A DNA stretch of 64,000 nt, taken from positions 80,228,001 to 80,292,000 of the forward strand of contig NC_043002.1 of the NCBI RefSeq assembly GCF_006345805.1, in the 5' to 3' direction. A program made the position numbers and the translations under genes. Under the pieces are notes generated by a model that searched no databases, was not told the DNA's origin, and saw only the letters and a program-made list of their open reading frames with translations. The stretch comes from Octopus sinensis (Eukaryota). This document shows, piece after piece, positions 1,318 to 61,940 of this stretch (positions are counted from its first letter, which is position 1; each line of letters opens with the position of its first letter).

Positions 1318-2189
1318 ACATTTTAATACATATTTCGTACACACACACACGCACACACGCATACATTCACACATACACGCATACACAAACATACACGCGC
1401 GAACATACGCACACATATACACACACATACACAAACATACACGCGAGCACATACACACACATATACACACATACACACATACATACTTACACACACATAC
1501 ACTATGTGTATAGATAGACATACGTAGATAGTGTGTATACACTAACAATCACACCAAGTCAAAATTATACTCGCACGCACATACAATAGACATCAACAAA
1601 TATCATAGTCGCAGCACGCAAAAACGCATCAATCAGATATACAAAAAACACACATACACACACACAGGCACTTCCATCCGCACAAACACACACACACACG
1701 CATACACACTCACATACACACATACATATCGAGATTATCACTTAACAAAAATTCCCAAAAACATCTATGTACAATGTCCACAAACACACCAGCATCCAAA
1801 CATACCGTCTATTAATACAACCATATATAATATATACACACATACAAACAAAAAACCTATCATATTCTTTCTAAAAATTTTTGCCTATATTTCTCATCTC
1901 TTTGTCTCATATTCCCCCCACCCCAACCCCTCCTCTCACATACATCCACTTGCTTTCTTTCTCTGACTCCTCTCGCTCTCTTTTTTTTTCACTCATCTAT
2001 ATTATTCTTCTCTCCAACTCCGTTCTCTTTCTTCTCTTCTCTCTCCCTCTCTCTGTCTCTCTCTCTGTTGCTCTACTTATCCTTCTTCCAATCTCTGGTA
2101 TATTTCTGTTCTTTCTCTCCATTCCCTCTTTCACTTCACTTATTTTTTCTTTTTCTTTGTTCACTTAATTTCTCCCTCTCTCTCTCTAC

Positions 2190-2239
<50 letters not shown>

Positions 2240-3662
2240 GTCTATTTATCTATCACTCTTGCATACATTTTTGCTCTCTCTCTCTAACTTCTCTCTTTTA
2301 TCTAACCCTCCCCCTCTCTCTCTCTAACACTCTCCGTCTCTTTGCTTACTTATTTTCACAATCAAACTTTCATTCTACCTTCCCCCCTTTCTCTCTCTTT
2401 CTCTTTAATCTTTCTCTCTCTATTTTCAAATCTCGATTTTCTCCTTCCTCTTACCAATTACTCACTCTGTCTGTTTTCCTTTCTTGCTTTCTCTTTCTCT
2501 GTCTGTCTCTGTCTCTGTGTCTGTCTCTCTTTCGTTTTCTCTCTCACTATCTCTTTCCCTCTCTTTTTCTCACTCCAACCGTCTCTCATTTCCGTTGTAT
2601 TTCCTTTTCTTCAGTATTTTCTTCTCGCCTGTTCCACACAAATAACTGTATGTTTTTCAATCTATATTGGCAAGAGTTTCATGTAGCGCCTGGGTGGCTC
2701 ACAATTAACAAACAACACATTATATTTTATTTTTCATTGTTTGTTTTCTTTCTCACTCACTCTACCCATTCATTCAACGATAAGAAAAAAATCTCGAAAA
2801 CTTGGCTTGCCTTTGGCTTGGCGTGTCTTGCTATCTCTTCATACAGGATCATAAAATGGATTGGCGGTGTTGAGTTGCCAATATTGCAGATGTCAGTATG
2901 ACTTCTAATACCACCAACCACACCCATTCATCTGGCTAACTCTCTATTTAAAGAGTTTATAGAGAAAGCTTCTGAGTGACCTCTCAACCGTCTAGAAATC
3001 GCAGTCAAAAATCCATTTATAAGACACTCGTTCTGTCATGAAATTCAAGGACGATGTGATAGTCAAGGTTATACAAAAACCATGGAATGTTCATTGCCAG
3101 TATTCTTTGAAAATACATTTGATTGATTAGGGTTAATTTAGGGCTTCTACGGGGTTAATCAACAAAAAAGAAACACCTACGTGGTAATCCGGCTCGCAAG
3201 AAATGGTAGCCTAATTATCCTCAAATTACACTGCTGGTGTCTTGAAAAAGACGTAAACATTGTGGTCAATATAATAGACCAAGGAAAAGATGACAAGTCG
3301 TGGGAGGAATGTCTATGAGAATCTAACTGGCATAAAACAGCAATAACAACTTCTGCTACTACTACTAATACTACTATTGCTGTTACTACAACAATCAGCT
3401 ATCTAGTTATTCATAATTCAAAGACCTCCCGCAAAGAGCTGTGGGTTCGGGTCCCATGCGTACAGAAACCCTACTTTTTTCCGTCGAGGGCGTATATGTC
3501 CCAATATTAGACTATTTTCTGTAGTCATTACATAGTGATCGCTTATAAGCGTTAAGCTTATAAAATATTATCTTTTACAGAATTGTAAAAATGGACACAG
3601 CTTACCAAAAGAAAAAAAAAAGAAAAAGAAAAAGAAAGAAAACAAAACCATCGCATATATAT

Positions 3663-7810: not shown

Positions 7811-8171
7811 GATTTTACTAATTCGGCATCATTGAGAGAGAATCGAACTGCTGGATTTGTGACTCTGACGGAGAACCGCTCGTTCAACAAGAACATATAT
7901 CTTACCCAACAAGTAACCACTTCAACATACCCTCAAAAAATACCCTTAAATGATTAAGAACCTTAATAAGAGAAACAGAAAATATTAAATTAGAAGCAAA
8001 ATGGAACTGCATGATTAATGAGTTACGTATAATGAAGCTTTTGCTTCGGAATCATCACTTTCACCACGAAATGTGTCCAAGACATTTGGAACTGGTTATG
8101 ACATTGACACAATATGTTCTTCAGAAACAGTGTTAACTCATTTGGTTGAATGGATTTTGAAAGCACTATAT

Positions 8172-8521
8172 ATTTATTTACTACCCACAAGCGGCTAAAC
8201 ACAGAAGGGACAAACAAGGACAGACAAACGGATTAAGTCGATTACATCGACCCCAGTGCGTAACTGGTACTTAATTTATCGACCCCGAAAGGATGAAAGG
8301 CAAAGTCGACCTCGGCGGACCGGCAGAGGAAATACCTATTTCTTTACTACCCACAAGGGTCTAAACACAGAGGGGACAAACAAGGAGAGACAAACGGATT
8401 AAGTCGATTACATCGGCCCCAGTGTGTAAACTGGTACTTAATTTATTGACCCCGAAAGGATGAAAGGCAAAGTCGACCTCGGCGGAATTTGAACTCAGAA
8501 CGTAACGGCAGACGAAATACG
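8172..8521 (-). mobile_element. SINE-B dimer, 3' part of the host SINE split by the LINE
   Basis: Two tandem bodies (GTCGACTTTGCCTTTCATCCTTTCGGGGTC...GTGGGTAGTAAAGAAATA) lacking the head; the head lies at 13886-13934. Confidence 0.92.
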
Positions 8522-8765
8522 AATTTCTTTATTGCCCACCGGGGCCAAACATAGATATGGACAGTACAACTGATGGGATCAGTGAATCGATATGATTTTA
8601 CATAAATGTGACATCAAAAATAAAATACAATACATAAAAATCGAATGGAATACACAGTACAAAACACTACAAATGAAGCGATGATCAAGTTACGCTCCGA
8701 TCCCACAAGCCCCGATCTACCGCTGATACCTTTTTATTTTTCCTTTTTTTTTTTTCCACGTCTAT

Positions 8766-11700
8766 TCACACGGTTCCTTGCACGCACAACACTCGTGCAA
8801 CATACTTCCATCTCTTTTGGAACGTACACTCTAACAGACACCTCTTCTCCAGCCACAGTTTCCTTTTCAAATGAAAAGAAAAAAAAGGATCGTAAATCGT
8901 CACCAGAGATAAAGTTGCCTGTCTTAATTCCTTTTATCCTAGTATTCCATACAGCCTCTTTTGCTATTGCTACAACCGTGAGAAAACAATTCTTACCTTC
9001 GTTCGTTAGAACTCCCGGTGGGTCAATTTTTATAATTGACTCAGTCGACAGCCGTACTCTTCCTTCGCCGACAACAGATGTTCAGCATAAGCCCACATTT
9101 CAGTTATCTCCGGACACTGAACAATAGCGTGAGGGACGGTTTCCCTGTCCCCACCGCATCTTGGACAGGTCGGCGACTGACGTTTACCATGTCTTGCGAG
9201 TTTATCCCAAACGGGCAAGGCACCTCTGTAGCATTGCCAGGTTAAGGACTTTTGGAAGTTGTCCAACGTTCTCAACCCGAATGTACGAAGAAACAAGCTG
9301 TCCAGTTGAATAAATCCGAGACCTAGAGTCGACCCCAGGCCATCGTCGCATTCAGACTCTACCAACCCACTATATAAAATCCGTGTGGAACCCCCACCGC
9401 TGGCGTTGCCCGAGCGCCGGAACAGCAAGAGGGCCTTACGGCACTCTTTATGCCACTCACTCGACCTCGGTCTACGAGAACACCAGGCTTCCTGTTCGCA
9501 AAAACTCTTGAACTCAGGGAACATTTGTCTGGCCAGCGGAGACCACACCCGTTCACTATCCAGGAGAATCCAGAGGTGCCTCAACCTCAACGCATGTCTG
9601 CGCATCATTAACCAAGGCATCCCTAAACCTCCATTTAAAGGCTTTTGACAGCAGACAGAGCGTTTCACAAGTGGCGACCTGCCCTTCCACAAAAAGCGAA
9701 AGAGCTGTCTCTCCAACCTGATCAACCACGAATCCGGACAGGGCACGAAGTCAGGCGGTAGGTAATGACCGATGCGATAAACACATTGGCCACTTCCGCC
9801 CTCCCTTTCAGGGATAGCCACCGCCAAGACCAAGTCTTGACTACTGCAGCCACCTGCTCAATACCTCCGTCCAGTTCTTCTCTATCTGGAGGCCTGGTCC
9901 AAACCAGACTCCCAGCAACTTAACCGGTCCCTCCGTCCAGCGCCTAACAACACTGTCTGAAGGCATCGACTTGCCAACCCAGGTGCCGAGCTGCAAGCCG
10001 ACCGACTTTTCCCGGTTAATCTTTGCTCCTGCTACCTCCTCGTAAGCCTCAATAGTCTTACCTACTTCACGTAGGCGTACCACTGTGGTTACACTGATAG
10101 TGATATCATCCGCGAAAGCCGTAACAAACTCCTCTAGTCCTGGTTCTCTCGGGATGCCACTCAACCTTTGCAGTAATGGCTCGAGAGCCATCACATACAA
10201 AAGTGGTGAAAGCGGACATCCTTGACGAACCGAGCGTCTGATGCAGAACGGCTTCGAAAGGAAACCGTTCACCCGAACTATCGAGTCAATGTTGTGGTAC
10301 AAAGCGATAAACCACCCGAGGAAGCCAAGGCCCAGGCCAAACCGCGCAAGTACAGTCGCTAGGTATCGATGGTCAACCCTATCAAAAGCTTTAGACTGGT
10401 CCAAATGCACCAATGCCCCACCTTTGCCAGATTTATTACCAAACCTCTCTATGGTATAGCGAATAAGATGGAGGGTATCCTGAATGGTTCTGCCTGGGAT
10501 GGCACATGTCTGTGCCTCCCCGACTATACCATTCGCGACACGCGCCAACCTTTTTGCTAGAACCTTGGCCAAAATCTTCACTTCTGCGTTTAACAGAGTG
10601 ATGGGCCTGAAATTCTCTAGAACGTCCCCCTTATCCGGGTCCTTTCTGACCAACGTCACTACTCCCCGGCGCACAGATCTGGGGATAAACCCATTCTGTT
10701 TCCAGTTCGCGTACACGTCAGTCAGTAGTTGCCCGAACAAGTCTGGCATACATTTATACAGCTCGTACGGAAGACCATCAAGTCCCGGTGACTTACCCGC
10801 TTTACAATCGGCCAAAGCCTCCATCACCTCCTCAAGTGTGATTGGCCCTTCGCAAGACTCCGCATCCGACCCCGAGAGGCACGGCAGCCCGGTAAGAAAG
10901 TCCTCGAGGGCTCTCCCACCACCAGGACCGCCGTCACCCCCGAACAGCTGGGCGAAGTACTCCCGAAAGACCTCACACATTTTCTCGGGTTCGTTTATCA
11001 AGACACCATTTTGATTCGTCAAAGACCGAATAGAGGAACTATTTCCTTGCCGAGCTTCCACCACTCGGGCCCATCCAGCGGCTTTGATTCCTTCACTTCC
11101 CATTGCACGTAACTTAGCTCTGGTAATACTTCCCATGTGGTGGGCTTCAAGATGCTGGTTTAACTCCAGTCTTTTTCACCCTCGCTTGGTCTGTATTACC
11201 AGTCCTCCAGGCTTCTTCTAGTTCCTTAACTAGACCATCTCCTATTTTACGTCCCTTCTTAGCTAAACTTATGCTAAACCTAATAGACTCATATTTGATG
11301 GCTCTTTTTAGGGCGTACCACCATTTGTTATTAATGATGGTACCTGTTAATGCCCTCTGTATTAACATCTTGATCCGCTTTCTGTACTCCTCAATCGCCA
11401 AAAGGGACGTATTGAGTTTCCAGTAGCCAGATCCCTGTCTATGCAACTTATCTACCGTCAGTTTACAGGTAACCATCTTGTGGTCACTGTAGCTGACTAG
11501 AAAAAACTGTGGACACTCAACTATGGACTTATCTTTTTCTCTAATTAAAATCCTATCTAGATATGTTCTGGTAGACCCGTCACTATTTGACCACGTCCAC
11601 TGTGGAGTGTTCGGGTGCTCCAACCTATATGGATCTGCTAGCTGAAATTGACTTAGCAGATCCCGAAAGCCTGTGTTACATTTTCTGTTCATGTTCGAGT

Positions 11701-12163
11701 TTGAGCCAACACAATCTGTGTGTGCTGCACATATTGTATTAGAGTCTCCTAACACTACTAGTGAATGCGACGTGGCTAGGAACTTTCCTAGGCCACGAAA
11801 ATATTCAGTTTGCGGGCCAATAATGTTTGGTGCATAAATAGCGACCAGCCTGATTGTCTTGCCACAACTGAATGTCAAGTCGAGAACGACCAGCCTGCCT
11901 TCTGGGTCAGAAAAAACCAACTTTTTCTCGGCTACCCGGTTTCTTTTTAGTAGGACCAACACCCCACCCCCCCTCCCCCGACTCGGAGAAACGTATTTCT
12001 CGTAGCCGTTCAGGAGGGGGAGCAGATCTCTTGGCCCCTTCACCCGGGTTTCCGTTGCAACAATTACATCCAAATTTCTCGACCTGATGTCATTCAGAAA
12101 GCGTCCTTGCTTCCAGCTTGACAACAGGCCATGAACATTTAAACAACCAATGTGAATAGCCAT
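8766..12163 (-). pseudogene. LINE ORF2: APE endonuclease, reverse transcriptase, zf-RVT (about 4 frameshifts)
   Basis: APE motifs CLNVHGL, ATETR, VLGDSN, WTWS, YLDRIL, SDHKMV. RT motifs PGLDG, FRPITLLN, QGCPLSPLLY, FADD. C-terminal CPRC..ETVPHAIVQC. Pieces are track ORFs 11147-12166, 9841-11136 and 9030-9833, plus a shifted tail (AKEAVWNTR...FQKRW...GTV*) ending at 8766. Confidence 0.93.
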
Positions 12164-12169
12164 CACTTA

Positions 12170-13732
12170 CCTGTTTAATCAGGATTGTCCGGTGGAGGGG
12201 ACCCTCCACCTTTTTTTTATCCAGGGTCGGAGGTGGACGGTCTTGGGAAATAGATTTGTCAAAATCCCGTCTCACCACCGACACAGAATTATCAGGTGGA
12301 GGGGGATCTCCACCTTTTCCTTTTCTCGCGGGATCGGAGCTGGTAATCCATGAAATATCGACTTGTTAAAATCTAATCTCAATGAAGATACAGTCTTTCT
12401 GTACTTATTTTGTAGAATTCTATAAGTCTTATTTGAGACTTCATATATGTCGTAATTGATAAATTCCTCTGAAAGGTTATCAATTTTTTTACAGTCTTTA
12501 TGAGTTGAATGTCTCTCATGAGCTCAGTATCTTTAGTGTATACGGCTATTATGCCTTTTTTTTCTTTTTTCTCTTCTGGCAGTCTTTTTTGGTCGTTGTT
12601 CTGTAGTAGTCGCCGCTCTCGGCTGGGTTGCTGGCTGTATTTTTCTTTGTTTGTTGTTTTTTTCTCATCTGTTTCTTTCTTTATCTTCTTCCTCTTTGTC
12701 TTTTTTCTCCTCTTCCTCCTCTTCTTCATTTTCCTTGCAGTTCCTTCGAATGTGGCCTAATTGACCACATAAAAAACATCGAGGTTTTCGGCCCTCAACA
12801 AACACCACGAGGTTCTCCTCCCCTACCTCAATTGTCTCAGGAATTGTTTGAATTATTTTAGGGTCCGCTTGAATGAGAAGATTATTGTTTTACCATCCCA
12901 GCGTGGGTTTTCCGTAGCGGTAGCCTGGAGGAGAGTAATTTTTTCTACCTCTTTGATTAGGACTGCCGCCAACAACCACATAGGTTCGACCTCTGGCGGG
13001 ACCCTTGTAATTTTTATTCGCGACGTCCTCATCCCCCATATAATAGGGTATTAACTCCACGTCGTTCGTTTTCAACGTTTCCACTACTGAGTTCTTGTGT
13101 GCTATTTCTTTATTGGTGAACCTTACTTCCACCGTTCCGAATTTTTTTCCTCTTCTCAGAAATACTACGTCGCCCAATATTGGCTTTAAGCACTTTTCTA
13201 TTTTCTCTTCTGACATTCTTTCAATTTTTCTATTTTGTAGACAATATGTTTTGAAAATTATTGTTTTTTGCTTTTCTTCCTGTAATAACTTTTGCGGAGG
13301 TTCAATTTTCACACTGTTGTCATTTATTTCCATCATTTTGCTGTATTTCATAATTTCGCTTTTATTCGTCGACAGTATCTGGGTTCCACCCCCAGCAGCC
13401 AACGCAAAACTTTTTTTTTCCATTTTTTGGTTCTATCTGGATGCTAGGCACATCAATTATTCTCTTCGACACAATGCTTTGTTCTCTGGCAAAGTCGGAA
13501 ACTCTTCTGGTGAAAGTTCTGACGAGCTCTCAGACACATCTCCAAAAATATCAAATATATTATCCTCTCTGCTATTCCTTCTTGTAGCGGGGGAAACCCC
13601 TATTTCCTTGTCTGTAGTTGGCTCCTCGCCGGACATGTATTTCCTCCTCTCAACAGGAGAAACAAGTATTTCTGCTCCAACGGTAGGCTCCATGCTAGAC
13701 GACATTCTTCCCCCCAAAGGGGGAATGAACAA
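12170..13732 (-). pseudogene. LINE ORF1 (gag-like), frameshifted
   Basis: Track pieces 13457-13732 and 12890-13423 (RRM-like FGTVEVRF); my translation gives VFVEGRKPR-CFLCGQLGHIRRNC (CX2CX4HX4C at 12737-12778), then a charged low-complexity tail. This is a Tx1-type ORF1 layout. Confidence 0.8.
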
Positions 13733-13885
13733 CGCGTGCTACCACAAGCACTAAGTGTTTTCAATTGAAAACTCCAACAGTTAAGTTATTCAACAGTTTA
13801 ACAAGAAACAACAGTTGTTAACAATATTAACACCACGAAACAGCCATTCTTACTTCACGAACACATGCGCGGCAGACGAAATACG

Positions 13886-13934
13886 GCTAAGCATTTCGCC
13901 TGGCGTGTTAAGGTTTCTGCCAGTTTGCCGCCTT
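13886..13934 (-). mobile_element. SINE-B head (5' part of the split host SINE)
   Basis: AAGGCGGCAAACTGGCAGAAACC...GAAATGCTTAGC on minus; host TSD ATTTTGAAAGCACTATAT at 8154-8171 and 13935-13952. Confidence 0.92.
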
Positions 13935-14029
13935 ATTTTGAAAGCACTATATTCTGAAACGTTTATTCTTCCGCTGCGCGGGTTTTAGCTGCTTATTTTT
14001 AACGTATGCAAATTCAGCTGCTCGATATA

Positions 14030-21793: not shown

Positions 21794-22094
21794 TGCGTTT
21801 ATGCTATTACTAAACATTTTTACATCAAATTCGAGGATTACCCATCACATTTAGTCCGGTACAAATTTATTATTCTTTATCTAGCGTAGTATTGACAGCG
21901 ACTTCGAATACATGTAGCTATGAACGTATACTTATATGCATTTGCATGTGTGTGTGTATATTTGTGTATGTGTGTGAACGCGTGTGTAAGTGTGTGTATG
22001 TGTATGTATACATATACACACGTACATACATACATATATACATACATGTATATGTATATACACACACATAGATATGTATGTGTACGTTGGAATG

Positions 22095-22210
<116 letters not shown>

Positions 22211-22531
22211 TGGTGCTGTTGGTAATGATAACGACAACGAAGACGTCGACGATGCGGATGTTGACACTGATGTTAGTGATATTGAGTAATGAACAATGAT
22301 GGTGGTGTTGGTGGATGTTTCTGACGAGAAATAAGAGAAGGAGGAGGAGGAGGAGGGGGAAAAGTGGGGGAACAGAAGGAGGTGCATTTGGTGATTGTTG
22401 AATGTGAGGATGTGAAGTGGAACACGAGTGGAACAAACATATGTCCACGATTGTACATGTTCATTTAGTCCTGTCACAAACTGCGTGTGTAAATGTGTGA
22501 GTGTGTGAGCGTGTGTGTGTGAGCGTGTGAG

Positions 22532-22565
<34 letters not shown>

Positions 22566-22875
22566 AGCGCGCAGACGTGTGTGTCTGTATACACGCACGC
22601 TTCTGTTCGTTGCACGTTAGCGGAAGTACATGCGATCATGGATGTGTATTTACATAAAATTGCGTGCGTGCGCGCACGCACCTGCATATACGCATCAGCA
22701 TGTGTTTGCGTATGTGGCCTTGTGTCTGTACGTGTGTGTGAGTGTGTGTGCGTACGCTTGAGTGTACTGTGTGAGTGTAAATGCATGTTTCTGTTTATAT
22801 GTGTGAATGTGTGCGCGTGTTTGCGTGTATACGTGTATAAAGTATAACTTTATGTATACGTAATTTAAGTTTTGT

Positions 22876-23190
22876 GGAGGCGCAATGGCCCGGTGGTTAG
22901 GGCAGTGAACTCGCAGTCAGAGTACCGCGGTTTCGATTACCAGACCGGGCGTTGTGTGTTTTTTTTTGACCGAAAAGACCTAGATCTCCACGAGGCTGCG
23001 GCAGCGGGTTGTGGCAAACTCTCTTGTACTCTTTCGCCCCCAACTTACTCCCACTCCTTCTTCCTGTTTCTTGAGTAACGCTGCGAGGGACTGGCGTCCC
23101 GTCCGGCTGGGGGGAACACATACGCCATAGAAACCGGGAAACCGGGCCCATGAGCCTGGCTAGGTTTGAAAAAGGGCGTATTAATAAAAA
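22876..23190 (+). mobile_element. SINE-C, full length
   Basis: GGAGGCGCAATGGCCCGGTGGTTAGGG (A box), GGTTTCGATTACC (B box); matches 37733-38058. Confidence 0.9.
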
Positions 23191-23369
23191 AATAAATAAT
23201 TTGATTTAATGTGTGTACTGGTGCATATGTTTGTGTTTATACACGTGCGTGTATGCAAGTATTGTGTATTTGCCAACAATGTACACAAGCATACACCCTC
23301 ATGTGTGTATATATATATATATATTTTTATATATATATATATATATCATCACCATCATCATCGCACCCG

Positions 23370-23730
23370 GTGTAGATGTGTGTCAAAAAGCTTGCTTCCC
23401 AACTACGTGACTCCGGGTTCAGTCTCACGACATGTCACCTAGGGCAAATGTTTTCCACTATAGCCTCGGGCTGACCAAAGCTTTGTGAGTGGATTTGGTA
23501 GACGGAAACTGAAAGAAGCCCATCGTACATATATATATATATATAATAAACACACACGCACACGCACGCACACACATATATATATATATATATGTATGTA
23601 TGTATATGTAAATATATTTATGTGTGTGTATGTCTTTGTGTTTGTCACCACATTACCTCTTGACAACCGGACAACCAGAACGGTTGTGTTTACGGCCGCG
23701 TAATTTAGTGGAGCAGCAAATGAGACTGTT
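23370..23730 (+). mobile_element. SINE-A, degenerate
   Basis: GTGAGTGGATTTGGTAGACGGAAACTGAAAGAAGCCC core. Confidence 0.8.
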
Positions 23731-23778
23731 ATACTATTTTGCTTGGACACAACAAATACGCAAATATGCACACACACA

Positions 23779-23836
<58 letters not shown>

Positions 23837-23859
23837 GTACTGGCGAAGAAGGATGATCT

Positions 23860-23906
<47 letters not shown>

Positions 23907-23908
<2 letters not shown>

Positions 23909-24121
23909 GGGTGGCCCAAAAGTAAGTTTACAGTTTTACATCTATCTCTTTCGCATTCACATATTAACTGTTTAAATCTTAATTATAAAAAAATATGAAA
24001 CTATTATTTTATGTTAATTTAGTTAATTGTAAGATAGAAATTTAAATGTAATAAAATATTTTTGAAAAGAAATTTAAAGTGCCTACGTGATAACTGTAAA
24101 CCTAATTTTTGGGCCACCTTG
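23907..24121. mobile_element. Tc1/mariner-type MITE
   Basis: TIR CAGGGTGGCCCAAAAGTA(A/G)GTTTACAGTT; TA at the right end; an extra right end at 24183-24236; another copy at 40324-40537. Confidence 0.85.
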
Positions 24122-24296
24122 TATGTAAATAGATATATCTATCTATATGTTTTTCTCTCTCACTCTCTCTCTCTCTCTCTCTAAAGGAAATTTAAAGGGC
24201 CTACATAACTGTAAGCCTACTTTTTGGGCCACCCTGTATGTGAATAGTCATATCTATCTTTATGTTTCTCTTTCTCACTCACTCACTCCCTCTCTC

Positions 24297-24342
<46 letters not shown>

Positions 24343-24365
24343 CCTCTCTAACATTGGTTGATTTG

Positions 24366-24720
24366 AAGGCGGTTGGCTGGCAGAACGTCGCACAAACTGC
24401 TTAGCGTCATTTGGTGCGATTTTAAGTTCGTTCGAATCGGGTCGAGGTCGCCTTTGCTTTTCAACATATCGAGGTCGATAATATATGTACCAGTTGACCA
24501 CTGGGATCGATTTAATCGTTTTAAATCCTACCGGATATTTGCTGGCCTCGTGCCAAAAAAATTTGAAATCAATATTAATCGTGATGAAGGCTTACGAGCT
24601 GGCAGAACGGTAAGCTCGCCGGACAAAATGCTAAGCGGCATTTCATCCGTCTTTGCGTTTTGACTTTCAAATGACGCCGGGGTCGACTTTCTCTTTCATC
24701 CTTTCGGAGTGGATAAAATA
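24366..24720 (+). mobile_element. Two degenerate SINE-B copies
   Basis: Heads at ~24366 and ~24592; B-box and GTCGAC cores visible. Confidence 0.7.
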
Positions 24721-25129
24721 AGAAAGAATTGAAGACCTGGGAGAGATGTAACCGACTTACCATCTCTCTTAATATTGGTGGACTTGAACCCAATAATAAT
24801 GGTGCTGTTAAGACGGCTGTAGTGGTGGTGGTCGTCGTCGTGGTCGTAGTCGTCGTCGTGGTCATAGTGGTCGTCGAGGTCGTCGTCGTCATCGTAGTAA
24901 GTTGTGCTCTGCATAGACATGTCACCAAGGCTGTCCAACCGTGACCGTCTCGTTTTTATTTCCAACATCATTCAATGCGTATCTTTATTGATGTATTCAT
25001 TCATTATCTATTTTTCCTTTCATTTTTCTTTTGAAGACGACAAGGTGAATTTGAGGGCGATTTGCCTGCTATGTCTAGCAGATGGTGTGAGTACATAGAG
25101 ATTTCCTTGTTGGCTCCTAGATGTTCTTT

Positions 25130-25213
25130 TGGTGGTGTTGGTAGTGATGATGGTGGTGTGTTGTTGATGTTGGTGGTGGTGGTAGTGGCGGTGACATGAG
25201 TGTTGATGGTAGT

Positions 25214-25249
<36 letters not shown>

Positions 25250-25660
25250 ATTGGCGTAGCTTGTATTCTGCCGTAGTGGTGCGGACGAGGTGATGTGTTA
25301 GATTTTGGGGTTGGTACAGATAGTCAGGATTAGTAGTGGTTGTGTTAGTGTTAGTGGTGTTGCTGGCGGTGCGGTGCTGTAGGTGGCAGTGGTGGCGGTA
25401 AAGTAGTGACGTGAGTGGCGGCGGCGTTGTTGTTGTTGGTGGTGGTGGTGCGGGTGGTGGTGGTGGTGGTGGTGGCATTGGTGGTGGTTGTGGGAGTATA
25501 GTTTATTGTTCTTTTTGTAGGTATTGATGTTTTTGTTCTTGATGTTGTAGTAAGAGAGTGATCGTAGTGATGGTGGTTGTGGTGGTGGTGGTGGTGGTGG
25601 TGGTGGTTGGTGGTGGAGTAGAAGTGGTGTCGGTAGCGGTGGTAGTGGAGGCCGCAGTGG
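25130..25660. repeat. GGT/GTA/GTT-rich low-complexity trinucleotide region
   Basis: Directly visible. Confidence 0.9.
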
Positions 25661-26131
25661 ATAATATGAAGTAAAAAAAAATTAGTATAACCTCATCTTA
25701 CATCAAAGAACATCTCTTATCTGAAGAGGATCGACTTCATTAAGGCTTTGATGACGAGTTGGTCGTCACGTCACACACACGCGCACTAACACAAACCCAT
25801 ACACACACACGCATCCACATACACACACACTCACTTAGACACGCATCCACATACGCACACACTCACTTAGACACGCATGCATACATACGTATTGACGAAT
25901 ACACACACACATACCACAAACGCTCACATATATGCATTGACTTACACATGCGCAGACACACCAAACAAGCCGCACACGTACGCAGGAATAATTACAAATA
26001 CACATACATATACATTCACATTCATATATGTATATACGCATACACACATAAATACATATATGCATACACACAAACACAACTATATATATATATATGTATA
26101 TATACACGGCGAGAGAGAGATAAATATACAA

Positions 26132-26171
<40 letters not shown>

Positions 26172-26546
26172 ATCCTTATGTATATATACACATTTATATG
26201 TGTATGTATGAATGTATATATATATATATATTATATATATATATATATATACCAATTAAGGACTGAACACGAAAAGGTGGACAGTCAACATGCTAGATAT
26301 AGACGTCAAATCGCCATTCTCCACAAAGATTTTGTTCTCAAATAAAAATAAATATAAATAATAATAATATAATAATAAATAATAATAATTGTGGAGATGG
26401 CGATTTGACGTCTATATCTAGCATGTTGACTGTCCACCTTTTCGTGTTCAGTCCTTAATTGGTATATATAAATATTTTAATCTTCGGATTCTTTTTAATG
26501 TGCTAGACCACTGGTTTTAATTGACTAATATCAATTTCTACCCTTA

Positions 26547-27289: not shown

Positions 27290-28450
27290 TTGCCCTTCAT
27301 CCTGTTCGGGGTCGATAAACTAAGTACTAGTCCCGTATTGGGGTCGATGTAATCGACTAGACTCATCCTTCAAACTTCAGGCTTTGTGCCTTTACTAGAA
27401 AGGATATTTTGTCCGACTCACACGCGACGAGCTGGCTGAAACCTTGACTCGCCGGCTAAAATGTTTCGTAATACTTCTTCAGGCTTTACGTTCTGAGTTC
27501 ATTTCCACCAAGGTCGACTTTTGATTCCATCCTTTCATAGTCGACGAAATAAAAATCAGTGAGACACTAAAATCAATGTAATGGGCTAGTTTCCTATCCC
27601 AAAAGTTAAAGTTTTTCGTACAGAGGCGTCTTGCAGAAAAGACATTTCTTCTGGTTCTTGACGTTCTGAGTTCAAATCCCGCCAAGGATTCATAAAATAA
27701 AGCACCTGCCAAGTACTAGAATCGTTATAATTCACTACTCTCCTCCACTAAATTTTAACCTTGTACTCATATTATTAATGATCATATTTCATATACCCCT
27801 TTTCCAAGGCGGCGAGCTGGCAGAAACGTCAGCGCGCCGGGTGAAATTCTTAGCTGTATTTCGTCTGCCGTTACGTTCTGAGTTAAATTCCATCGCGGTC
27901 GACTTTGCCTTTCATCCTTTCGCACTAGGGTCGATGTAATCGACTTAATCCCTTTGTCTGTCCGTGTTTGTACCCTCTATGTTGAGCCCCTCCTGGGCAA
28001 TAAAGAAATAAAAATCGTTACTGTGGCGGGTAAAATGCTTTGTGGCGTTTATTCTGACATATTCTGAGTTCAAATTCCGCCGAGGTCAACTTTGGCTTTT
28101 ATTTTTTACGGGGTCGATAAATTAAGCACGAGTTGAGCCCCGGGGTCGATGTAATCGACTTACCCACTACTCCAAATTCTGGTCTTGTGCCAAAATTTGA
28201 AGCCAATATCTTCTGCCTGCAGGCTGCGAACTGACAGAATCGTTAGCCCGCTGGGCGAAATGCTTAGCAGCATTTCGTCTGTCTCTACATTCTGAGTTCA
28301 AATTCCGCCGAGGTTGATTTTGCCTTTTATACATTCGAGGTCGATTGAATAAGTATCAGTTCCGCACTGGGGTCAATTTAATTGACTTAATCCCTTTGAC
28401 TGTCCTTGTTTATCCCCTCTATGTTTAGCTTGTGAGTAATAATGAAATAA
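27290..28450 (+). mobile_element. Cluster of about six SINE-B copies and fragments
   Basis: Repeated heads (27427, 27806, 28011, 28222), GAGTTCAAAT B boxes and GGGGTCGATGTAATCGAC cores. Confidence 0.85.
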
Positions 28451-28670
28451 ATATTTTCCGTCTGCGAAATTTTCTTTAAATTTTTCATCTGTTCTATTCA
28501 TTTCTAAATTATTCGTTCCTCCATTTTCCATCTTTCGTTTCGTTTTTAGTTTCTTTTGATATTCTAGCCTACCACTGTTCGCAGGCTTTTCCTTCAGATT
28601 TGACCTTCCAACCGAAGCTGGCTGTATATTTCATTTTGGCAGATTGATAAAAAAAAAAAGGATCGGTTAT

Positions 28671-48860: not shown

Positions 48861-49174
48861 GATAGATATGTTTCTTTATTAACCACACAGGGCTGAACAC
48901 AGAGGAGGCAAATTACAAAGTAGAGCTTTTCTTTTGGGGGAAGAAAGAAAAAAAAGGGGAGTAGGTTTTCGATTAAAAGAGATCGTAAACAAAAAAAGAA
49001 GGAACAAAAACGCTCAATAGGGATCGTGTATCATGAAATGTCATGATGTAAAGTGTAAAGGGGGAAACAGATAAGGTCTATCCGTGGAAAAAAAAGCCTA
49101 CGGAAAAGACCATGGTAACCTCGGTCAATAATGTCACATGTTAACACATTTGTTTGCAAGTAACTCTCTGTTTT

Positions 49175-49176
49175 AA

Positions 49177-49220
<44 letters not shown>

Positions 49221-49243
49221 ATAAGACAAACAGACAGACAGAC

Positions 49244-49306
<63 letters not shown>

Positions 49307-49307
49307 C

Positions 49308-49398
<91 letters not shown>

Positions 49399-49520
49399 CA
49401 GGCAGACAAACTGGTAGACAGACAGTAAAATAGATAAGTGGATTGACTGATTGATTGATAGATAGATTGATTGATTGATTGAGTGAGTGAGTGAGTGAGT
49501 GAGTGAGTGAGTGAGTGAGC
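49175..49520. repeat. (GATA)n/(GATT)n/(GAGT)n array
   Basis: Directly visible. Confidence 0.95.
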
Positions 49521-49638
49521 GATTGTACGACTGATGGTTACACTTTGGATAAATAAATAGCTGAAGTGAAAGGTAGATCGAGCAATCGAGCGATCGATAG
49601 ATAGGTAGACAGATAGATAGACACACACACACACATAT

Positions 49639-49671
<33 letters not shown>

Positions 49672-49763
49672 TTGTGTGTATGGAGAAAGAAAGAAAGCAA
49701 GATCAATATACGGATAACTAGATAGGTAATAATATGGCTACAGAGATGGATGTGAAGATAGAC

Positions 49764-49845
<82 letters not shown>

Positions 49846-50646
49846 ACATATTGTAGTCATGCGTTTCGAGAAATACAAACGCTTTTAGTATCACTTTAAT
49901 TCACTACTTCAACAACAAAGCTTGTTGGATTGCTCATAGATACGTATCAAGACTTGATACCACATATCTTTCTATAAATGACTAATCATAATACACAAGC
50001 GGCTGACTACTAAACTATAGAACGCTAAATTAAATGACAGATAACGTTATATAACTGATATGGTACAGAATATTAATTATATCACCGTGCCATGTTAGTT
50101 AACTTGAGTTTGGATGTCAACTTTAAGCATTACTGATTACTAAAGCATGATCCATGAATACTGTTTTTCTCCGATATATGAGTTATCTCATTTGGACAGA
50201 CCTAACTGAAATTCTGTTGAGTTTTAGTAAGATTACAGCATGCTATCCTACTGTCCTGTTAGTCTTTACGATATACTGAGAACATCTGTTAGTGGAATGT
50301 AATGAAATTAGAAGATACTTTAATTCAGTTCCTACATATTGTAGGAATATTTTAGACTAATACCCTAATACCCGCCTGTGTACAGAGACAATTAAATCTG
50401 AGCAGAATTTCCCGCTCTGCACCCTAATTGATTGTTCAAATGACGTAGGTAGCATTAAAAACCTGACTGAATATACATGTGTGTGTATACATATAAGTGT
50501 GTCTGTGTGTGTATACATATATGTGTGTCTGTGTGTGTATACATATATGTATGTCTGTGTATATATATATATAATATACACATTGACAATGTTTCTACAT
50601 ATGTATACTTCCAAACATCTGCAAGCTCATACGATCATATGTCTGA

Positions 50647-50690
<44 letters not shown>

Positions 50691-50754
50691 TGACAATGTT
50701 TCTACATATGTATACTTCCAAACATCTGCAAGCTCATACGATCATATGTCTGAG

Positions 50755-50789
<35 letters not shown>

Positions 50790-50835
50790 CACACATGCAT
50801 ACATACGCGTATCTATCTATCTATCTATCTATCTA

Positions 50836-50895
<60 letters not shown>

Positions 50896-51004
50896 CATCT
50901 GGCTGGCTGTCTCTCAATTCTCTCTCTCTCTTTCTCTCAATATATATAGTAGCATACAAAAAGATATAAAAATAGGTGCTATTTGGCACCATTATAAACT
51001 CTTC

Positions 51005-51392
51005 ACTCTTTACACTTTTACTTGTTTCAGTCATTTGACTGTGGCCATGCTGGAGCACCGCCTTTAGTCGAGCAAATCGGCTGCAGGACTACTTCTTTGT
51101 AAGCCTAGTACTTACTGTAAGTACTTGCCGAACCGCTAGGTTACGGGGACGTAACATACCAGCATCGGTTGTCAAGCGATATTGGGGGAACAAACACAGA
51201 TACACAAACATATATACACACATATTTACACATATATACGACGGGCTTCTTTCGTTTCCGTCTACCAAATCCATTAACAATCGGCTCGAGGCTATAGTAG
51301 AAGACACTTGTCCAAGGTGCCACGCAGTGGGAATGAACCCGGAAGCATGTGGTTGGTAAGCAAGTACTTACCACACAGCTACTCCTACGCCT
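51005..51392 (-). mobile_element. SINE-A, full length
   Basis: Head TAGGCGTAGGAGTAGCTGTGTGGTAAG to tail GAAACAAGTAAAAGTG. Confidence 0.9.
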
Positions 51393-55818: not shown

Positions 55819-56319
55819 AATATTCACCAAATTTTACACCTCTAAATGCACTTTTTAAATAGTAACAAACATAGTAAAAACAACTCTTTGTTTAAAGGTA
55901 ATACTCACGTTTTCAACAGATGACCAGAAAACTGTATTTGTTGAAGATGTGAGACACACTTCAAGTGCAAAGCTAAGATTGAGGCTTGTTTCGATGTTAT
56001 TCAAAAGAATCATGATATCCATTCGCATCCGACAAATCTCAGCTACATTCTTGTTTTAGAATCAGTTGAAAATGTAAAGCAACACATAACGCAATCAGAT
56101 GAAGCGACACATTTCTATTTAACATTTGTATAAACGACTACCTTTAAGTGTATATGTGCATTACCACATAAAGACATACTATGATGCAACGAGAACTTAA
56201 AACCCACGAAAAGTGATGATTATTTTTTCATCGTTAGTAAAATAAGGATGCTTAATACATTTTCATATATGCTTCTTAAAATACCGCTATATACATTTCC
56301 TATCAATATTACGTAAACT

Positions 56320-56735
56320 AAGGCGGCGAGCTGGCAGAAACGTTAGCACGCCGGGCGAAATGCTTAGCGGTATTTCATCTGCCGTTACGTTGTGAATTCA
56401 AATTCCGCCGAGGTCGACATTGCCTTTCATCCTTTCGGGGTCGATAAATTAAGTACCAGCTACGTACTGGGATCGATGTAATCGACTTAATACCTATGCC
56501 TGTCCTTGTTTGTCCCTTCTATGTTTAGCCCCTTGTGGGTAATAAAGAAATAGGTATTTCGTTTGCCGCTACGTTCTGAGTTCAAATTCCGCCGAGGTCG
56601 ATTTTCCCTTTCATCCTTTCAGGGTCGATAAATTAAGTACCACTTACGTACTAGGGTCAATGTAATCGACTTAATCCCTTTGTCTGTCCTTGTTTGTCCC
56701 CTCTATGTTTAGCTCCTTGTGGGCAATGAGAAATA
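56320..56735 (+). mobile_element. SINE-B dimer
   Basis: Full unit 56320-56552, then a second unit starting at GGTATTTCGT directly after tail AAAGAAATA. Confidence 0.92.
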
Positions 56736-56935
56736 AGAATTGTTGGCACGCCGGGTGATATGCTTAGCGGCGTCTCGTCCGTCTCTATGTTCGGAGTTAA
56801 AACTCCGCCCAAGCCGATTTTACCTTTCCCTCTTTCGAGGTTGATGAATCAAATGTCACTGAAACACAGGGGTCGATATAATCGACTAGTCCCTTCCCTC
56901 AAATTTCAGGCTTTGTGTCTTTAGTAGAAAGAATT
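56736..56935 (+). mobile_element. SINE-B (other tail variant) lacking its first ~16 nt
   Basis: Starts AGAATTGTTGGCACGCCGGG immediately after the dimer tail. Confidence 0.8.
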
Positions 56936-57020
56936 ATTAAAATAAAGGTACTTAAAACATTTTTCACGCATGCTTCTTAAAATGATGTTTTATACATTTC
57001 CTGCTAACATTAAGTAAACT

Positions 57021-57240
57021 AAGGCAGCGAGCTGACAGAATCGTTAGTACGCCGGACAAAATGCTTAGCGGCGTTTCATCTGTCTTTATGTTCTGAGTTC
57101 AAACTCCTCCAAGGTCGATTTTACCTTTCCTTCTTTCGCCGTCGATAACATAAGTACCAGTTGATCTCTGAAGTCGATGTAGTCGACTTGCCCTCTGTCC
57201 CGAAGTTGCTGGTATTGGGCCAAAATTTGAAGCCAGTGTT
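57021..57240 (+). mobile_element. SINE-B, uninterrupted, alternative tail
   Basis: AAGGCAGCGAGCTGACAGAATCGTTAG...CCAAAATTTGAAGCCAG. Confidence 0.85.
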
Positions 57241-61489: not shown

Positions 61490-61940
61490 CAAATTCCGCT
61501 GTGGTTGACTTTACCTCTCCTCTTTCTTCAGGGTCGATAAAATAAGTACCTGTTGAGGAATAGGGTCGATGTAAATGACTAACCCACTCCCTGGGATTTA
61601 CTGGCCTTATGTTAAAATTTGAAACCGATACTATTGATAAATATTAAAGAGGTGAGCTAGCAGCATTGTTAGCACGCTGGGGTGAAAAAAATCCTCCAAA
61701 AAACACAGCAGCATTTCGTCGGTTTTTACAACGCGGTGAGCTGGCAGAATCGTTAGCACGCCGGGTAATTTACTTAGCGTTATTTCGTCCGTCTTTACGT
61801 GCTGTGTTCAAATTCTGCCGAGATGAACTTCACCTTACGTACCTTCGGCGTCGATAAAATAAATGCCAGCCGAGTAATAAGATCGATGTAATCGACTTAT
61901 TCCGAACTTGCTGGCCTAGTGAGAAAATTTTAAACAATTT
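61490..61940 (+). mobile_element. SINE-B fragments and copy
   Basis: Cores at 61490-61630, 61650-61720 and 61735-61940. Confidence 0.75.

What the first reader, a model, noticed from the sequence alone, without database searches (positions are those of the whole stretch)
8154..13952. Full-length Tx1/L1 LINE inserted inside a SINE-B, with both TSDs intact
Seen: the outer 18-bp TSD ATTTTGAAAGCACTATAT (8154-8171, 13935-13952) brackets a SINE-B. The inner 16-bp TSD CGGCAGACGAAATACG (8506-8521, 13870-13885) brackets a 5.35-kb APE-RT LINE in the same orientation. The LINE landed between the SINE's A-box-like (TGGCAGAA) and B-box-like (GAGTTCAAATTCC) motifs. Known: Tx1-clade elements are often sequence-specific; Tx1 targets a DNA transposon, Keno U2 snRNA, Dewa tRNA arrays and Mutsu 5S rDNA. 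Inference: this may be a Tx1 family whose target is a SINE.
Basis: partly seen in the sequence, partly recalled or inferred. Interest (0 to 1): 0.85.

Follow-up and report, generated by a model that had tools for sequence, protein, structure and literature searches.

The report
LINE nested in its partner SINE
A decayed 5.3-kb L1/Tx1-like jumping gene from an octopus-type genome sits inside the short element (SINE) that borrows its 3' tail, at a 16-bp spot where SINE copies have also landed, which hints at a preferred landing site but does not prove one.

Summary
The 18-bp repeat (8154-8171, 13935-13952) and the 16-bp repeat (8506-8521, 13870-13885) are exact and far beyond chance. Between the 16-bp copies lies a 5,348-bp LINE on the minus strand, in the same orientation as the SINE. 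It has ORF1 with a CCHC knuckle and ORF2 with APE, RT and zf-RVT domains.

It is full-length in extent but dead: ORF2 has four frameshifts and ORF1 has at least four stops.

New findings:
- The host SINE is a dimer.
- LINE and SINE share about 47 nt of 3' tail, so they are partners.
- The junction "tail|GGTATTTCGTCTGCCG" (site T) recurs at the LINE, at this SINE's unit boundary and at an independent SINE dimer at 56552/56553.
- A fourth tail-bearing SINE (28221-28449) sits in a T-like site outside any SINE.

This favours a re-used landing motif, as in Tx1-Mar/SINEU-3. However, other SINE copies lie at unrelated sites. The two nearest LINE relatives (Octopus sinensis, Argonauta hians) lie in a satellite and a microsatellite. 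No second copy of this family could be retrieved, so the genome-wide flank test was not possible. A one-step template-jump chimera remains a live rival. Tx1 clade membership was not tested against reference sequences.

The parts
8154..8171 (.). Outer TSD, left copy (ATTTTGAAAGCACTATAT)
   Evidence: Exact 18-mer, present only twice in the window.
8172..8336 (-). SINE unit B: T3 (8321-8336, GGTATTTCCTCTGCCG in sense), body with a 19-nt deletion after T3, and the LINE-like tail (8172-8190)
   Evidence: nhmmer match to SINE HMM positions 50-232, E=9e-50; alignment.
8337..8505 (-). SINE unit A: B box (8484-8496), CORE-like body and tail (8337-8356). Its tail abuts T3.
   Evidence: nhmmer match to HMM 50-232, E=1e-62. 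It is 93.3% identical to unit B.
8506..8521 (.). Inner TSD copy T2 (CGGCAGACGAAATACG on +; CGTATTTCGTCTGCCG in SINE sense; SINE HMM 49-64)
   Evidence: Exact 16-mer repeated at 13870-13885.
8522..8765 (-). LINE 3' UTR and tail. The last ~47 nt resemble the SINE tail (...CTATGTTTGGCCCCGGTGGGCAATAAAGAAATT). No poly(A).
   Evidence: HMM 197-231 matches 8523-8556; alignment of tails.
8766..12166 (-). LINE ORF2 remnant: APE 11150-12166, RT 9844-11175, zf-RVT and C-terminal part 8766-9857. Four frameshifts, near LINE nt 2700, 4020, 4805 and 4990.
   Evidence: Pfam Exo_endo_phos 3.4e-11, RVT_1 1.3e-29, zf-RVT 1.8e-8. Frames. PDB L1 ORF2p 1.5e-57.
12665..13705 (-). LINE ORF1 remnant with a CCHC zinc knuckle (12737-12778) and at least 4 in-frame stops
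   Evidence: zf-CCHC 5.1e-5; translation.
13706..13869 (-). LINE 5' UTR. The 5' terminus CGCATGTGTTCGT resembles that of the full-length Argonauta hians relative (ACACGTGTTTTCGT).
13870..13885 (.). Inner TSD copy T1
   Evidence: T1 and T2 share a private C at sense position 1, where other SINE copies have G, T or A.
13886..13934 (-). SINE head (HMM 1-48) with the A-box-like TGGCAGAA (13915-13922)
   Evidence: nhmmer match to HMM 1-65, E=5.8e-17; alignment.
13935..13952 (.). Outer TSD, right copy
56321..56734 (+). Independent SINE dimer with the same tail|T junction at 56552/56553 (AAAGAAATA|GGTATTTCGTTTGCCG)
   Evidence: The units are not A/A or B/B orthologous to the 8.2-kb dimer.
28205..28466 (+). 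Full-length monomer SINE (28221-28449) flanked by decayed T-like TSDs: AATATCTTCTGCCTGC (28205-28220) and AATATTTTCCGTCTGCG (28450-28466). It is not inside a SINE.
   Evidence: scores 9 and 8; background p 0.002 and 0.005.

Best explanation
An L1-superfamily LINE, most likely of the L1-Tx1 kind annotated in octopus genomes, inserted by target-primed reverse transcription into a copy of the CORE-type SINE that shares its 3' tail. The endonuclease nicked the bottom strand at the 5' edge of the motif GGTATTTCGTCTGCCG (site T, SINE positions 49-64). Reverse transcription started from the tail ...AAAGAAATT. The second nick fell 16 bp away and produced the 16-bp TSD. The same machinery had earlier placed a SINE unit at the same phosphodiester bond, making the SINE a dimer, and did so independently at 56.5 kb. 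T is therefore a re-used, preferred landing motif that the partner SINE itself carries. Each insertion regenerates T on both sides, which allows serial 'sandwich' insertions. Shown here: the anatomy, the TSDs, the shared tail and the site re-use. Inferred: that the cause is endonuclease or RNA-target recognition of T. The strength of the preference is unknown. The copy itself is dead.
For: Both TSDs are exact, and removing the insert restores a continuous SINE. The tail|T junction occurs three times with at most 1 mismatch (8329-8345, 8514-8530, 56544-56560) and nowhere else. Given a hit in the 232-nt SINE, the chance of coinciding with a pre-existing junction in the same orientation is about 1/464. 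The two dimers are independent events: c1A-c1B are 93.3% identical, against c1A-c5A 89.1% and c1B-c5B 87.2%. The monomer at 28221-28449 has T-like flanks on both sides outside any SINE (p about 0.002). T1 and T2 are identical and share a private variant, while T3 differs at 2 of 16 positions, as expected if the LINE insertion is the youngest event. The inner repeat of 16 bp falls within the TSD range of this machinery: 18 bp for the outer TSD and 15 bp in the relative L002. LINE and SINE share about 47 nt of tail, and octopod LINE relatives share it too. The published precedent has the same anatomy: Tx1-Mar and SINEU-3 with a 16-bp TSD and tandem copies sandwiching a TSD, read there as sequential insertions (PMC4494074).
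Against: Only one copy of this LINE family is available. Of 9 tail-bearing 3' junctions in the window, 5 are not at T. Two of these (28010, 56734) abut position ~16 of another SINE subfamily, and three lie at unrelated sequences. The nearest LINE relatives lie in a satellite and a microsatellite. The window is SINE-rich (5.5-6%; 11.6% genome-wide in O. vulgaris, PMC13282606), so nested hits are not rare. The LINE's decay looks roughly as old as the A-B unit divergence (my rough estimate from the counts, not a computed age), so a clear age order is not shown.
Confidence: 0.5

Rival explanations
1. One-step chimera with no DNA target specificity. During a single TPRT event at the outer site, the reverse transcriptase copied a SINE RNA from its tail to position 49. 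It then jumped to the 3' end of a second SINE RNA, then to the LINE RNA, and finally to a 5' fragment of SINE RNA ending at position 64. The recurrent 'site' would then be a recurrent RNA end or RT stop in the tRNA-like head, not an endonuclease target.
For: The whole 5.8-kb composite lies within one perfect pair of 18-bp TSDs. Units A and B are each other's closest relatives. In Argonauta hians a full-length LINE relative is directly preceded by three head-to-tail SINEs with no spacer, all between (ATT)n runs, and L003 holds two head-to-tail LINE copies. These arrays are what end-to-end template jumping produces. At 61651-61729 a SINE 5' fragment (HMM 5-68) is fused to the 5' end of a complete SINE, with no host remainder downstream. 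By my rough estimate, LINE decay and the A/B divergence are of similar size.
Against: It needs three jumps, the last onto an internal-ending fragment, and gives no reason for a 16-nt overlap that matches a normal TSD length. T1 and T2 share a private C that T3 lacks, which a DNA duplication explains more simply. It does not explain T-like flanks on both sides of the 28221-28449 monomer.
Confidence: 0.2
2. Ordinary nested insertion by chance. The LINE/SINE endonuclease has only a short AT-rich nick preference (flanks tend to read NN-TATT). The SINE carries one such site in the sense strand, so any sense hit in a SINE lands at T. SINEs are simply abundant.
For: SINEs cover 5.5-6% of the window and 11.6% of the O. 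vulgaris genome. TATTT occurs once in the SINE consensus, inside T (consensus). Several unrelated flanks begin with a TAT-like sequence. The relatives are not in SINEs.
Against: Four of eight SINE 3' junctions fall inside other SINEs, against the 6-12% expected. All five nested events are co-oriented with their host. The match at 28450-28466 extends beyond TATTT into CGTCTGC.
Confidence: 0.2
3. Hitch-hiking. The LINE entered a SINE once, elsewhere in the genome. A read-through transcript of the whole composite (head-T-LINE-T-A-T-B) was then retrotransposed as a unit through the terminal SINE tail, creating the outer 18-bp TSD. The inner repeat would then be inherited, not made at this locus.
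For: A single perfect outer TSD brackets everything. Kojima 2015 raises the same caveat for SINEU-3 and Mariner.
Against: No second copy of the composite or of the LINE is in the window. A 5.8-kb transcript cannot come from the SINE's pol III promoter, because the LINE is full of T runs (sequence). It still needs one original insertion at T.
Confidence: 0.05

Closest known systems
Tx1-Mar LINEs and SINEU-3 of crocodilians (Kojima 2015, PMC4494074)
   Same: An APE-type L1/Tx1 LINE and a non-autonomous SINE use the same site in another interspersed repeat. The TSD is 16 bp. Tandem copies sandwich a TSD and are interpreted as sequential insertions. The strength of preference is graded: 90%, 23% and 13% for SINEU-3, -1 and -2.
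   Different: There the target is a Mariner DNA transposon, and the preference was shown on hundreds of copies. Here the candidate target lies inside the LINE's own partner SINE, and only 3-4 junctions in one 64-kb window support it.
Tx1L of Xenopus, and Keno/Dewa/Mutsu/Kibi/Koshi (target-specific Tx1 families; Kojima and Fujiwara 2004, as cited in PMC4494074; Dewa and Mutsu are named from my own knowledge and the finding, not from the passages read)
   Same: L1-superfamily architecture (ORF1 plus APE-RT-Cys ORF2) and insertion into repeated sequences. The two octopod relatives also sit in a satellite and a microsatellite.
   Different: Clade membership was not tested against reference sequences, and specificity of this family is not demonstrated.
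Stringent-type LINE/SINE partners that share a 3' tail, such as UnaL2/UnaSINE1 (named from my own knowledge) and the monocot L1 lineage with a conserved 3' end (PMC3472496)
   Same: About 47 nt of shared 3' tail, no poly(A), and a SINE with a tRNA-like head and a CORE-like body.
   Different: No conserved stem-loop could be shown in the tail. Partnership is inferred from sequence only. The O. sinensis LINE tail is closer to the SINE tail than this copy's tail is.
L1-Tx1 families annotated in octopus genomes (PMC8967140; PMC13282606 lists 13 recently active families in O. vulgaris)
   Same: Same host group, since the nearest relatives are Octopus sinensis and Argonauta hians, and the same domain architecture.
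   Different: In the passages I read, these papers give only abundance and age and say nothing about target sites or SINE partners. The exact family was not found in any searchable collection.

Membership tests
L1 superfamily (L1/Tx1) non-LTR retrotransposon | ORF2 with an N-terminal APE-type endonuclease followed by a reverse transcriptase | tested here: met
   Pfam Exo_endo_phos 3.4e-11 and RVT_1 1.3e-29. The best PDB match is human LINE-1 ORF2p, 1.5e-57 over residues 6-867. R2 proteins match only the RT domain, at 1e-20 or weaker.
L1 superfamily (L1/Tx1) non-LTR retrotransposon | Cys-rich C-terminal domain, and an ORF1 with a nucleic-acid-binding motif | tested here: met
   zf-RVT 1.8e-8; zf-CCHC 5.1e-5 in ORF1. 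No RRM was detected by Pfam.
L1 superfamily (L1/Tx1) non-LTR retrotransposon | Poly(A) 3' end (L1 proper, relaxed type) | tested here: not met
   The element ends ...GGGCAATAAAGAAATT directly at the TSD. It has a specific tail shared with a SINE.
Tx1 clade | RT phylogeny groups it with Repbase Tx1 references (RTclass1) | not testable with these tools
   No reference Tx1 sequences were available. The closest database proteins carry no clade names. The only indirect argument is that L1-Tx1 is the sole L1-like superfamily listed for octopus.
Target-specific non-LTR retrotransposon (criterion of Kojima 2015: one sequence type in more than 20% of flanks) | The same target in more than 20% of independent copies of the family | not testable with these tools
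   Only one copy of the LINE exists in the window, and none closer than 59% aa elsewhere. The window ORF is not in the contig index.
Target-specific non-LTR retrotransposon (criterion of Kojima 2015: one sequence type in more than 20% of flanks) | Re-use of one site by the LINE and its SINE; tandem copies sandwiching the TSD | tested here: met
   T lies at 8321-8336, 8506-8521 and 13870-13885, and the same junction recurs at 56552/56553. A T-like site lies at 28450-28466.
Target-specific non-LTR retrotransposon (criterion of Kojima 2015: one sequence type in more than 20% of flanks) | Tail-sharing elements are mostly at the target | tested here: inconclusive
   Four of 9 tail junctions in the window are at T or a T-like site; 5 are elsewhere. 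The relatives in O. sinensis and A. hians are not at T.
LINE/SINE partner pair | Shared 3' tail sequence | tested here: met
   The SINE HMM (positions 197-231) matches the LINE end at 8523-8556.
LINE/SINE partner pair | Conserved tail stem-loop recognised by the RT | tested here: inconclusive
   RNAalifold predicts 2 pairs, with no covariation and energy -0.04 kcal/mol.
tRNA-derived (CORE-type) SINE | tRNA-like head with A and B boxes | tested here: inconclusive
   A B-box-like GAGTTCAAATTCC and an A-box-like TGGCAGAA are present. ARAGORN and Rfam find no tRNA, even at E up to 10. The resemblance of the body to the CORE domain comes from memory and was not tested.
tRNA-derived (CORE-type) SINE | Short, multicopy, TSD-flanked retroposon | tested here: met
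   About 29 HMM hits in 64 kb, with an 18-bp TSD here.

The most novel reading that the evidence does not exclude
This octopod L1-Tx1 family, and the SINE it mobilises, home specifically to a 12-16-nt motif inside that same SINE. The LINE would then use its own parasite as a genomic safe harbour. SINE dimers and LINE-in-SINE composites would be by-products of serial insertion at a site that every insertion regenerates.
Probability: 0.25. Interest if true: 0.7.

Novelty: new member of a known kind. Interest (0 to 1): 0.42.

Why it matters
Target-specific Tx1 LINEs are known for snRNA genes, rDNA, microsatellites, DNA transposons and LTR elements. I found no report of one that prefers its own partner SINE. 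In octopus genomes SINEs are reported at about 40% of repeat content (PMC8967140) or 11.6% of the O. vulgaris genome (PMC13282606). A SINE-directed landing preference there would explain SINE dimers and clusters. It would also give the LINE millions of harmless targets and supply a defined 16-bp substrate for studying how an APE-type endonuclease or the RNA tail chooses DNA. If instead the structure is a template-jump chimera, it documents RT jumping between a LINE RNA and its SINE RNAs in a mollusc. Either way this copy is an inactive fossil with no evident effect on a gene.

Tried and rejected
- Scanned metagenome contigs for the tail pattern GTGGGYARTAAAGAAAT. The scan returned 120 loci and all were chance matches; none held the SINE or LINE.
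- Scanned genome contigs and viral contigs for T plus its flank. This gave three chance bacterial hits and none, respectively.
- Looked up the window's own RT ORF in the contig index; it is not on record.
- Ran protein searches with the joined ORF2, the P0001 C-terminus and this LINE's C-terminus. Two attempts with full P0001 timed out. The best identity was 56-59%, so no same-family copy was found.
- Fetched contigs of the relatives P0036 and P0038; they end inside the 3' UTR or have a different tail. P0037 is not indexed.
- Tried to name the clade through 150 representative hits and their cluster names; the names were uninformative.
- Ran Rfam and ARAGORN on the SINE head; nothing was found.
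- Ran RNAalifold on the tails; no supported structure.
- Searched papers for SINE sequence strings and for the assembly accession; no hits.
- Considered that GGTATTTC is part of the element's 3' end, by analogy with the A. hians tail ...GAAATCTATT. Rejected for this window because the outer TSD begins immediately after ...AAATAAAT, and copies at other sites lack it.
- Considered that the second recurrent junction (position ~16 of the other SINE subfamily) is T-like. Its alignment score was at background level.

Full report
**Observation**

The 18-mer ATTTTGAAAGCACTATAT occurs exactly twice in the window, at 8154-8171 and 13935-13952, where 0.01 matches are expected by chance.

The 16-mer CGGCAGACGAAATACG occurs exactly at 8506-8521 and 13870-13885. 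The five near-matches elsewhere are the single copy of this motif in other SINE copies.

Deleting 8522-13885 gives a continuous SINE that aligns end to end with uninterrupted copies in the window.

**The insert**

- The insert 8522-13869 is 5,348 bp, 45.7% G+C against 37% for the window, and reads on the minus strand. This is the same orientation as the SINE.
- ORF2 carries Exo_endo_phos, RVT_1 and zf-RVT domains.
- ORF1 carries a CCHC knuckle.
- The best solved-structure match is human LINE-1 ORF2p, at 1.5e-57 across the endonuclease and RT. R2 proteins match only the RT.
- The copy is not intact. ORF2 changes frame four times, near LINE nt 2700, 4020, 4805 and 4990. ORF1 has at least four in-frame stops.
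- It appears complete at both ends. Its 5' terminus, CGCATGTGTTCGT, resembles the terminus of a full-length Argonauta hians relative.
- It ends in ...GGGCAATAAAGAAATT, with no poly(A).
- No other copy of the LINE is in the window.

**The host SINE**

An HMM built from four monomers (232 nt) finds about 29 SINE copies or fragments, covering 5.5-6% of the window. There are two subfamilies:
- Type I has a tail ...TTGTGGGTARTAAAGAAATA.
- Type II shares positions 1-175 but has a different tail.

The host element is a type I dimer. In sense order it reads: head, T, [LINE], T, unit A, T, unit B.
- The head is 13934-13886.
- The three T copies are 13885-13870, 8521-8506 and 8336-8321.
- Unit A is 8505-8337 and unit B is 8320-8172.
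- T is GGTATTTCGTCTGCCG, HMM positions 49-64.

ARAGORN and Rfam do not recognise a tRNA in the head.

**LINE and SINE are partners**

The last ~47 nt of the LINE align with the SINE tail. The LINE relatives from Octopus sinensis and Argonauta hians have the same tail. RNAalifold gives no supported stem-loop in it.

**Source organism**

The only relatives with organism names are from Octopus sinensis and Argonauta hians. They are 45-59% identical in protein and about 70% in DNA, including the 3' UTR. Argonauta also has SINEs with this body and tail. The window therefore comes from an octopod, but the species was not identified. Octopus repeat surveys list L1-Tx1 as the only L1-like LINE superfamily. 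The passages I read do not mention target sites (PMC8967140 and PMC13282606).

**Site re-use**

The junction 'tail|T' occurs three times with at most one mismatch:
- LINE|T at 8522/8521
- unit A|T at 8337/8336
- a second dimer at 56552/56553

Several points bear on whether this re-use is meaningful:
- *The two dimers are independent.* Units A and B of the first dimer are 93.3% identical and share private variants. A-to-A and B-to-B identities between the two dimers are 89.1% and 87.2%.
- *A fourth case lies outside any SINE.* The monomer at 28221-28449 has T-like flanks on both sides: AATATCTTCTGCCTGC and AATATTTTCCGTCTGCG. Their alignment scores are reached by 0.5% and 0.2% of window 20-mers. 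No SINE similarity lies downstream.
- *The coincidence is unlikely by chance.* Given a LINE hit somewhere in a 232-nt SINE, the chance of matching an existing junction and its orientation is about 1 in 464.
- *The age order fits.* T1 and T2 are identical and share a private C. T3 differs at 2 of 16 positions, which fits the LINE being the last arrival.
- *There is a published precedent.* Kojima (2015) describes the same anatomy for Tx1-Mar and SINEU-3: a 16-bp TSD and tandem copies sandwiching a TSD. He reads these as sequential insertions at one target (PMC4494074).

**Limits**

- Of nine tail-bearing 3' junctions in the window, five are not at T.
  - Two (28010 and 56734) abut position ~16 of a type II SINE.
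  - Three lie at unrelated sequence: the outer TSD, 14509 and 48870.
- The O. sinensis relative is a 5'-truncated copy inside a 31-bp satellite.
- The A. hians relative is full-length, ends in (ATT)n and is preceded directly by three head-to-tail SINEs.
- No same-family copy could be retrieved from any collection.

**Rival: a one-step chimera**

- *For the rival.* The Argonauta SINE-SINE-SINE-LINE array and a head-to-tail LINE pair in an unrelated assembly both suggest that these reverse transcriptases jump between RNA ends. So does a SINE 5' fragment (HMM 5-68) fused to the 5' end of another SINE at 61651-61733. The whole 5.8-kb composite, bracketed by one perfect TSD, could then be a single-event chimera.
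- *Against the rival.* It needs three jumps. It gives no reason for an overlap of exactly TSD length. It does not account for the private variant shared by T1 and T2, or for the T-like flanks at 28.2 kb.
- *Other rivals.* A chance hit with only a short TATT-like nick preference also remains possible. So does hitch-hiking of a pre-formed composite.

**Verdict**

The structure is real and well resolved. It is a dead, full-length L1-superfamily LINE nested in its partner SINE at a site that this LINE/SINE system has used repeatedly. That makes a landing preference likely. A strict SINE-specific Tx1 family is possible but unproven, and Tx1 clade membership itself was not tested.

Noticed in passing
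window 27807-28165 and 56321-56894: Two independent type I SINEs (or dimers) end directly against position ~16 of a type II SINE head (tail|A(A/G)AAT(C/T)GTT at 28010/28011 and 56734-56736). This is a second recurrent junction and is not significantly T-like.
   Followed up: partly
window 61651-61905: A SINE 5' fragment (HMM 5-68, ending just past T) is fused to the 5' end of a complete type II SINE, and the host remainder is missing downstream. This looks like a template-switch product.
   Followed up: partly
L124 7521-9610 and from 11071 (Octopus sinensis CM016876.1): The closest named LINE relative is 5'-truncated and embedded in a 31-bp tandem satellite (AGATGTTCCATCACAGCTGCCACCAGTTTCC). 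It may be a satellite-targeting sister family, but there is only one example.
   Followed up: partly
L125 4848-11205 (Argonauta hians BAAFZT010000007.1): (ATT)n, then three head-to-tail tRNA-like SINEs, then a full-length LINE, then (ATT)n, with no spacers between units. The A. hians SINE tails end in the palindromic AATAGAGAAATCTATT.
   Followed up: partly
L003 1-10186 (ENA ERZ21867824 ctg122168l): Two 98.9%-identical copies of a distant relative (37-39% aa) lie head to tail. The 14 nt after the second copy repeat the element's own 5' end (GCAGACTAGAAGGT). The single copy in L002 has a 15-bp TSD.
   Followed up: partly
P0037 (NCBI, 'MAG: Herbaspirillum sp.' zinc-binding domain-containing protein): This 'bacterial' MAG protein is 74% identical to the C-terminus of an octopod-type LINE ORF2. 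It is probably host (cephalopod-like) contamination in the bin.
   Followed up: no
window 56250-56320 versus 56950-57021: About 70 bp upstream of two SINEs 700 bp apart are homologous. This is a local duplication, or a longer repeat unit that contains a type II SINE.
   Followed up: no
window 2068-2900, 21900-26200, 49100-51100 and others: Dense microsatellites ((TATC)n/(TCTA)n, (CA)n, (TA)n, (ATT)n) produce long spurious ORFs. No convincing host gene was seen in the 64 kb.
   Followed up: no
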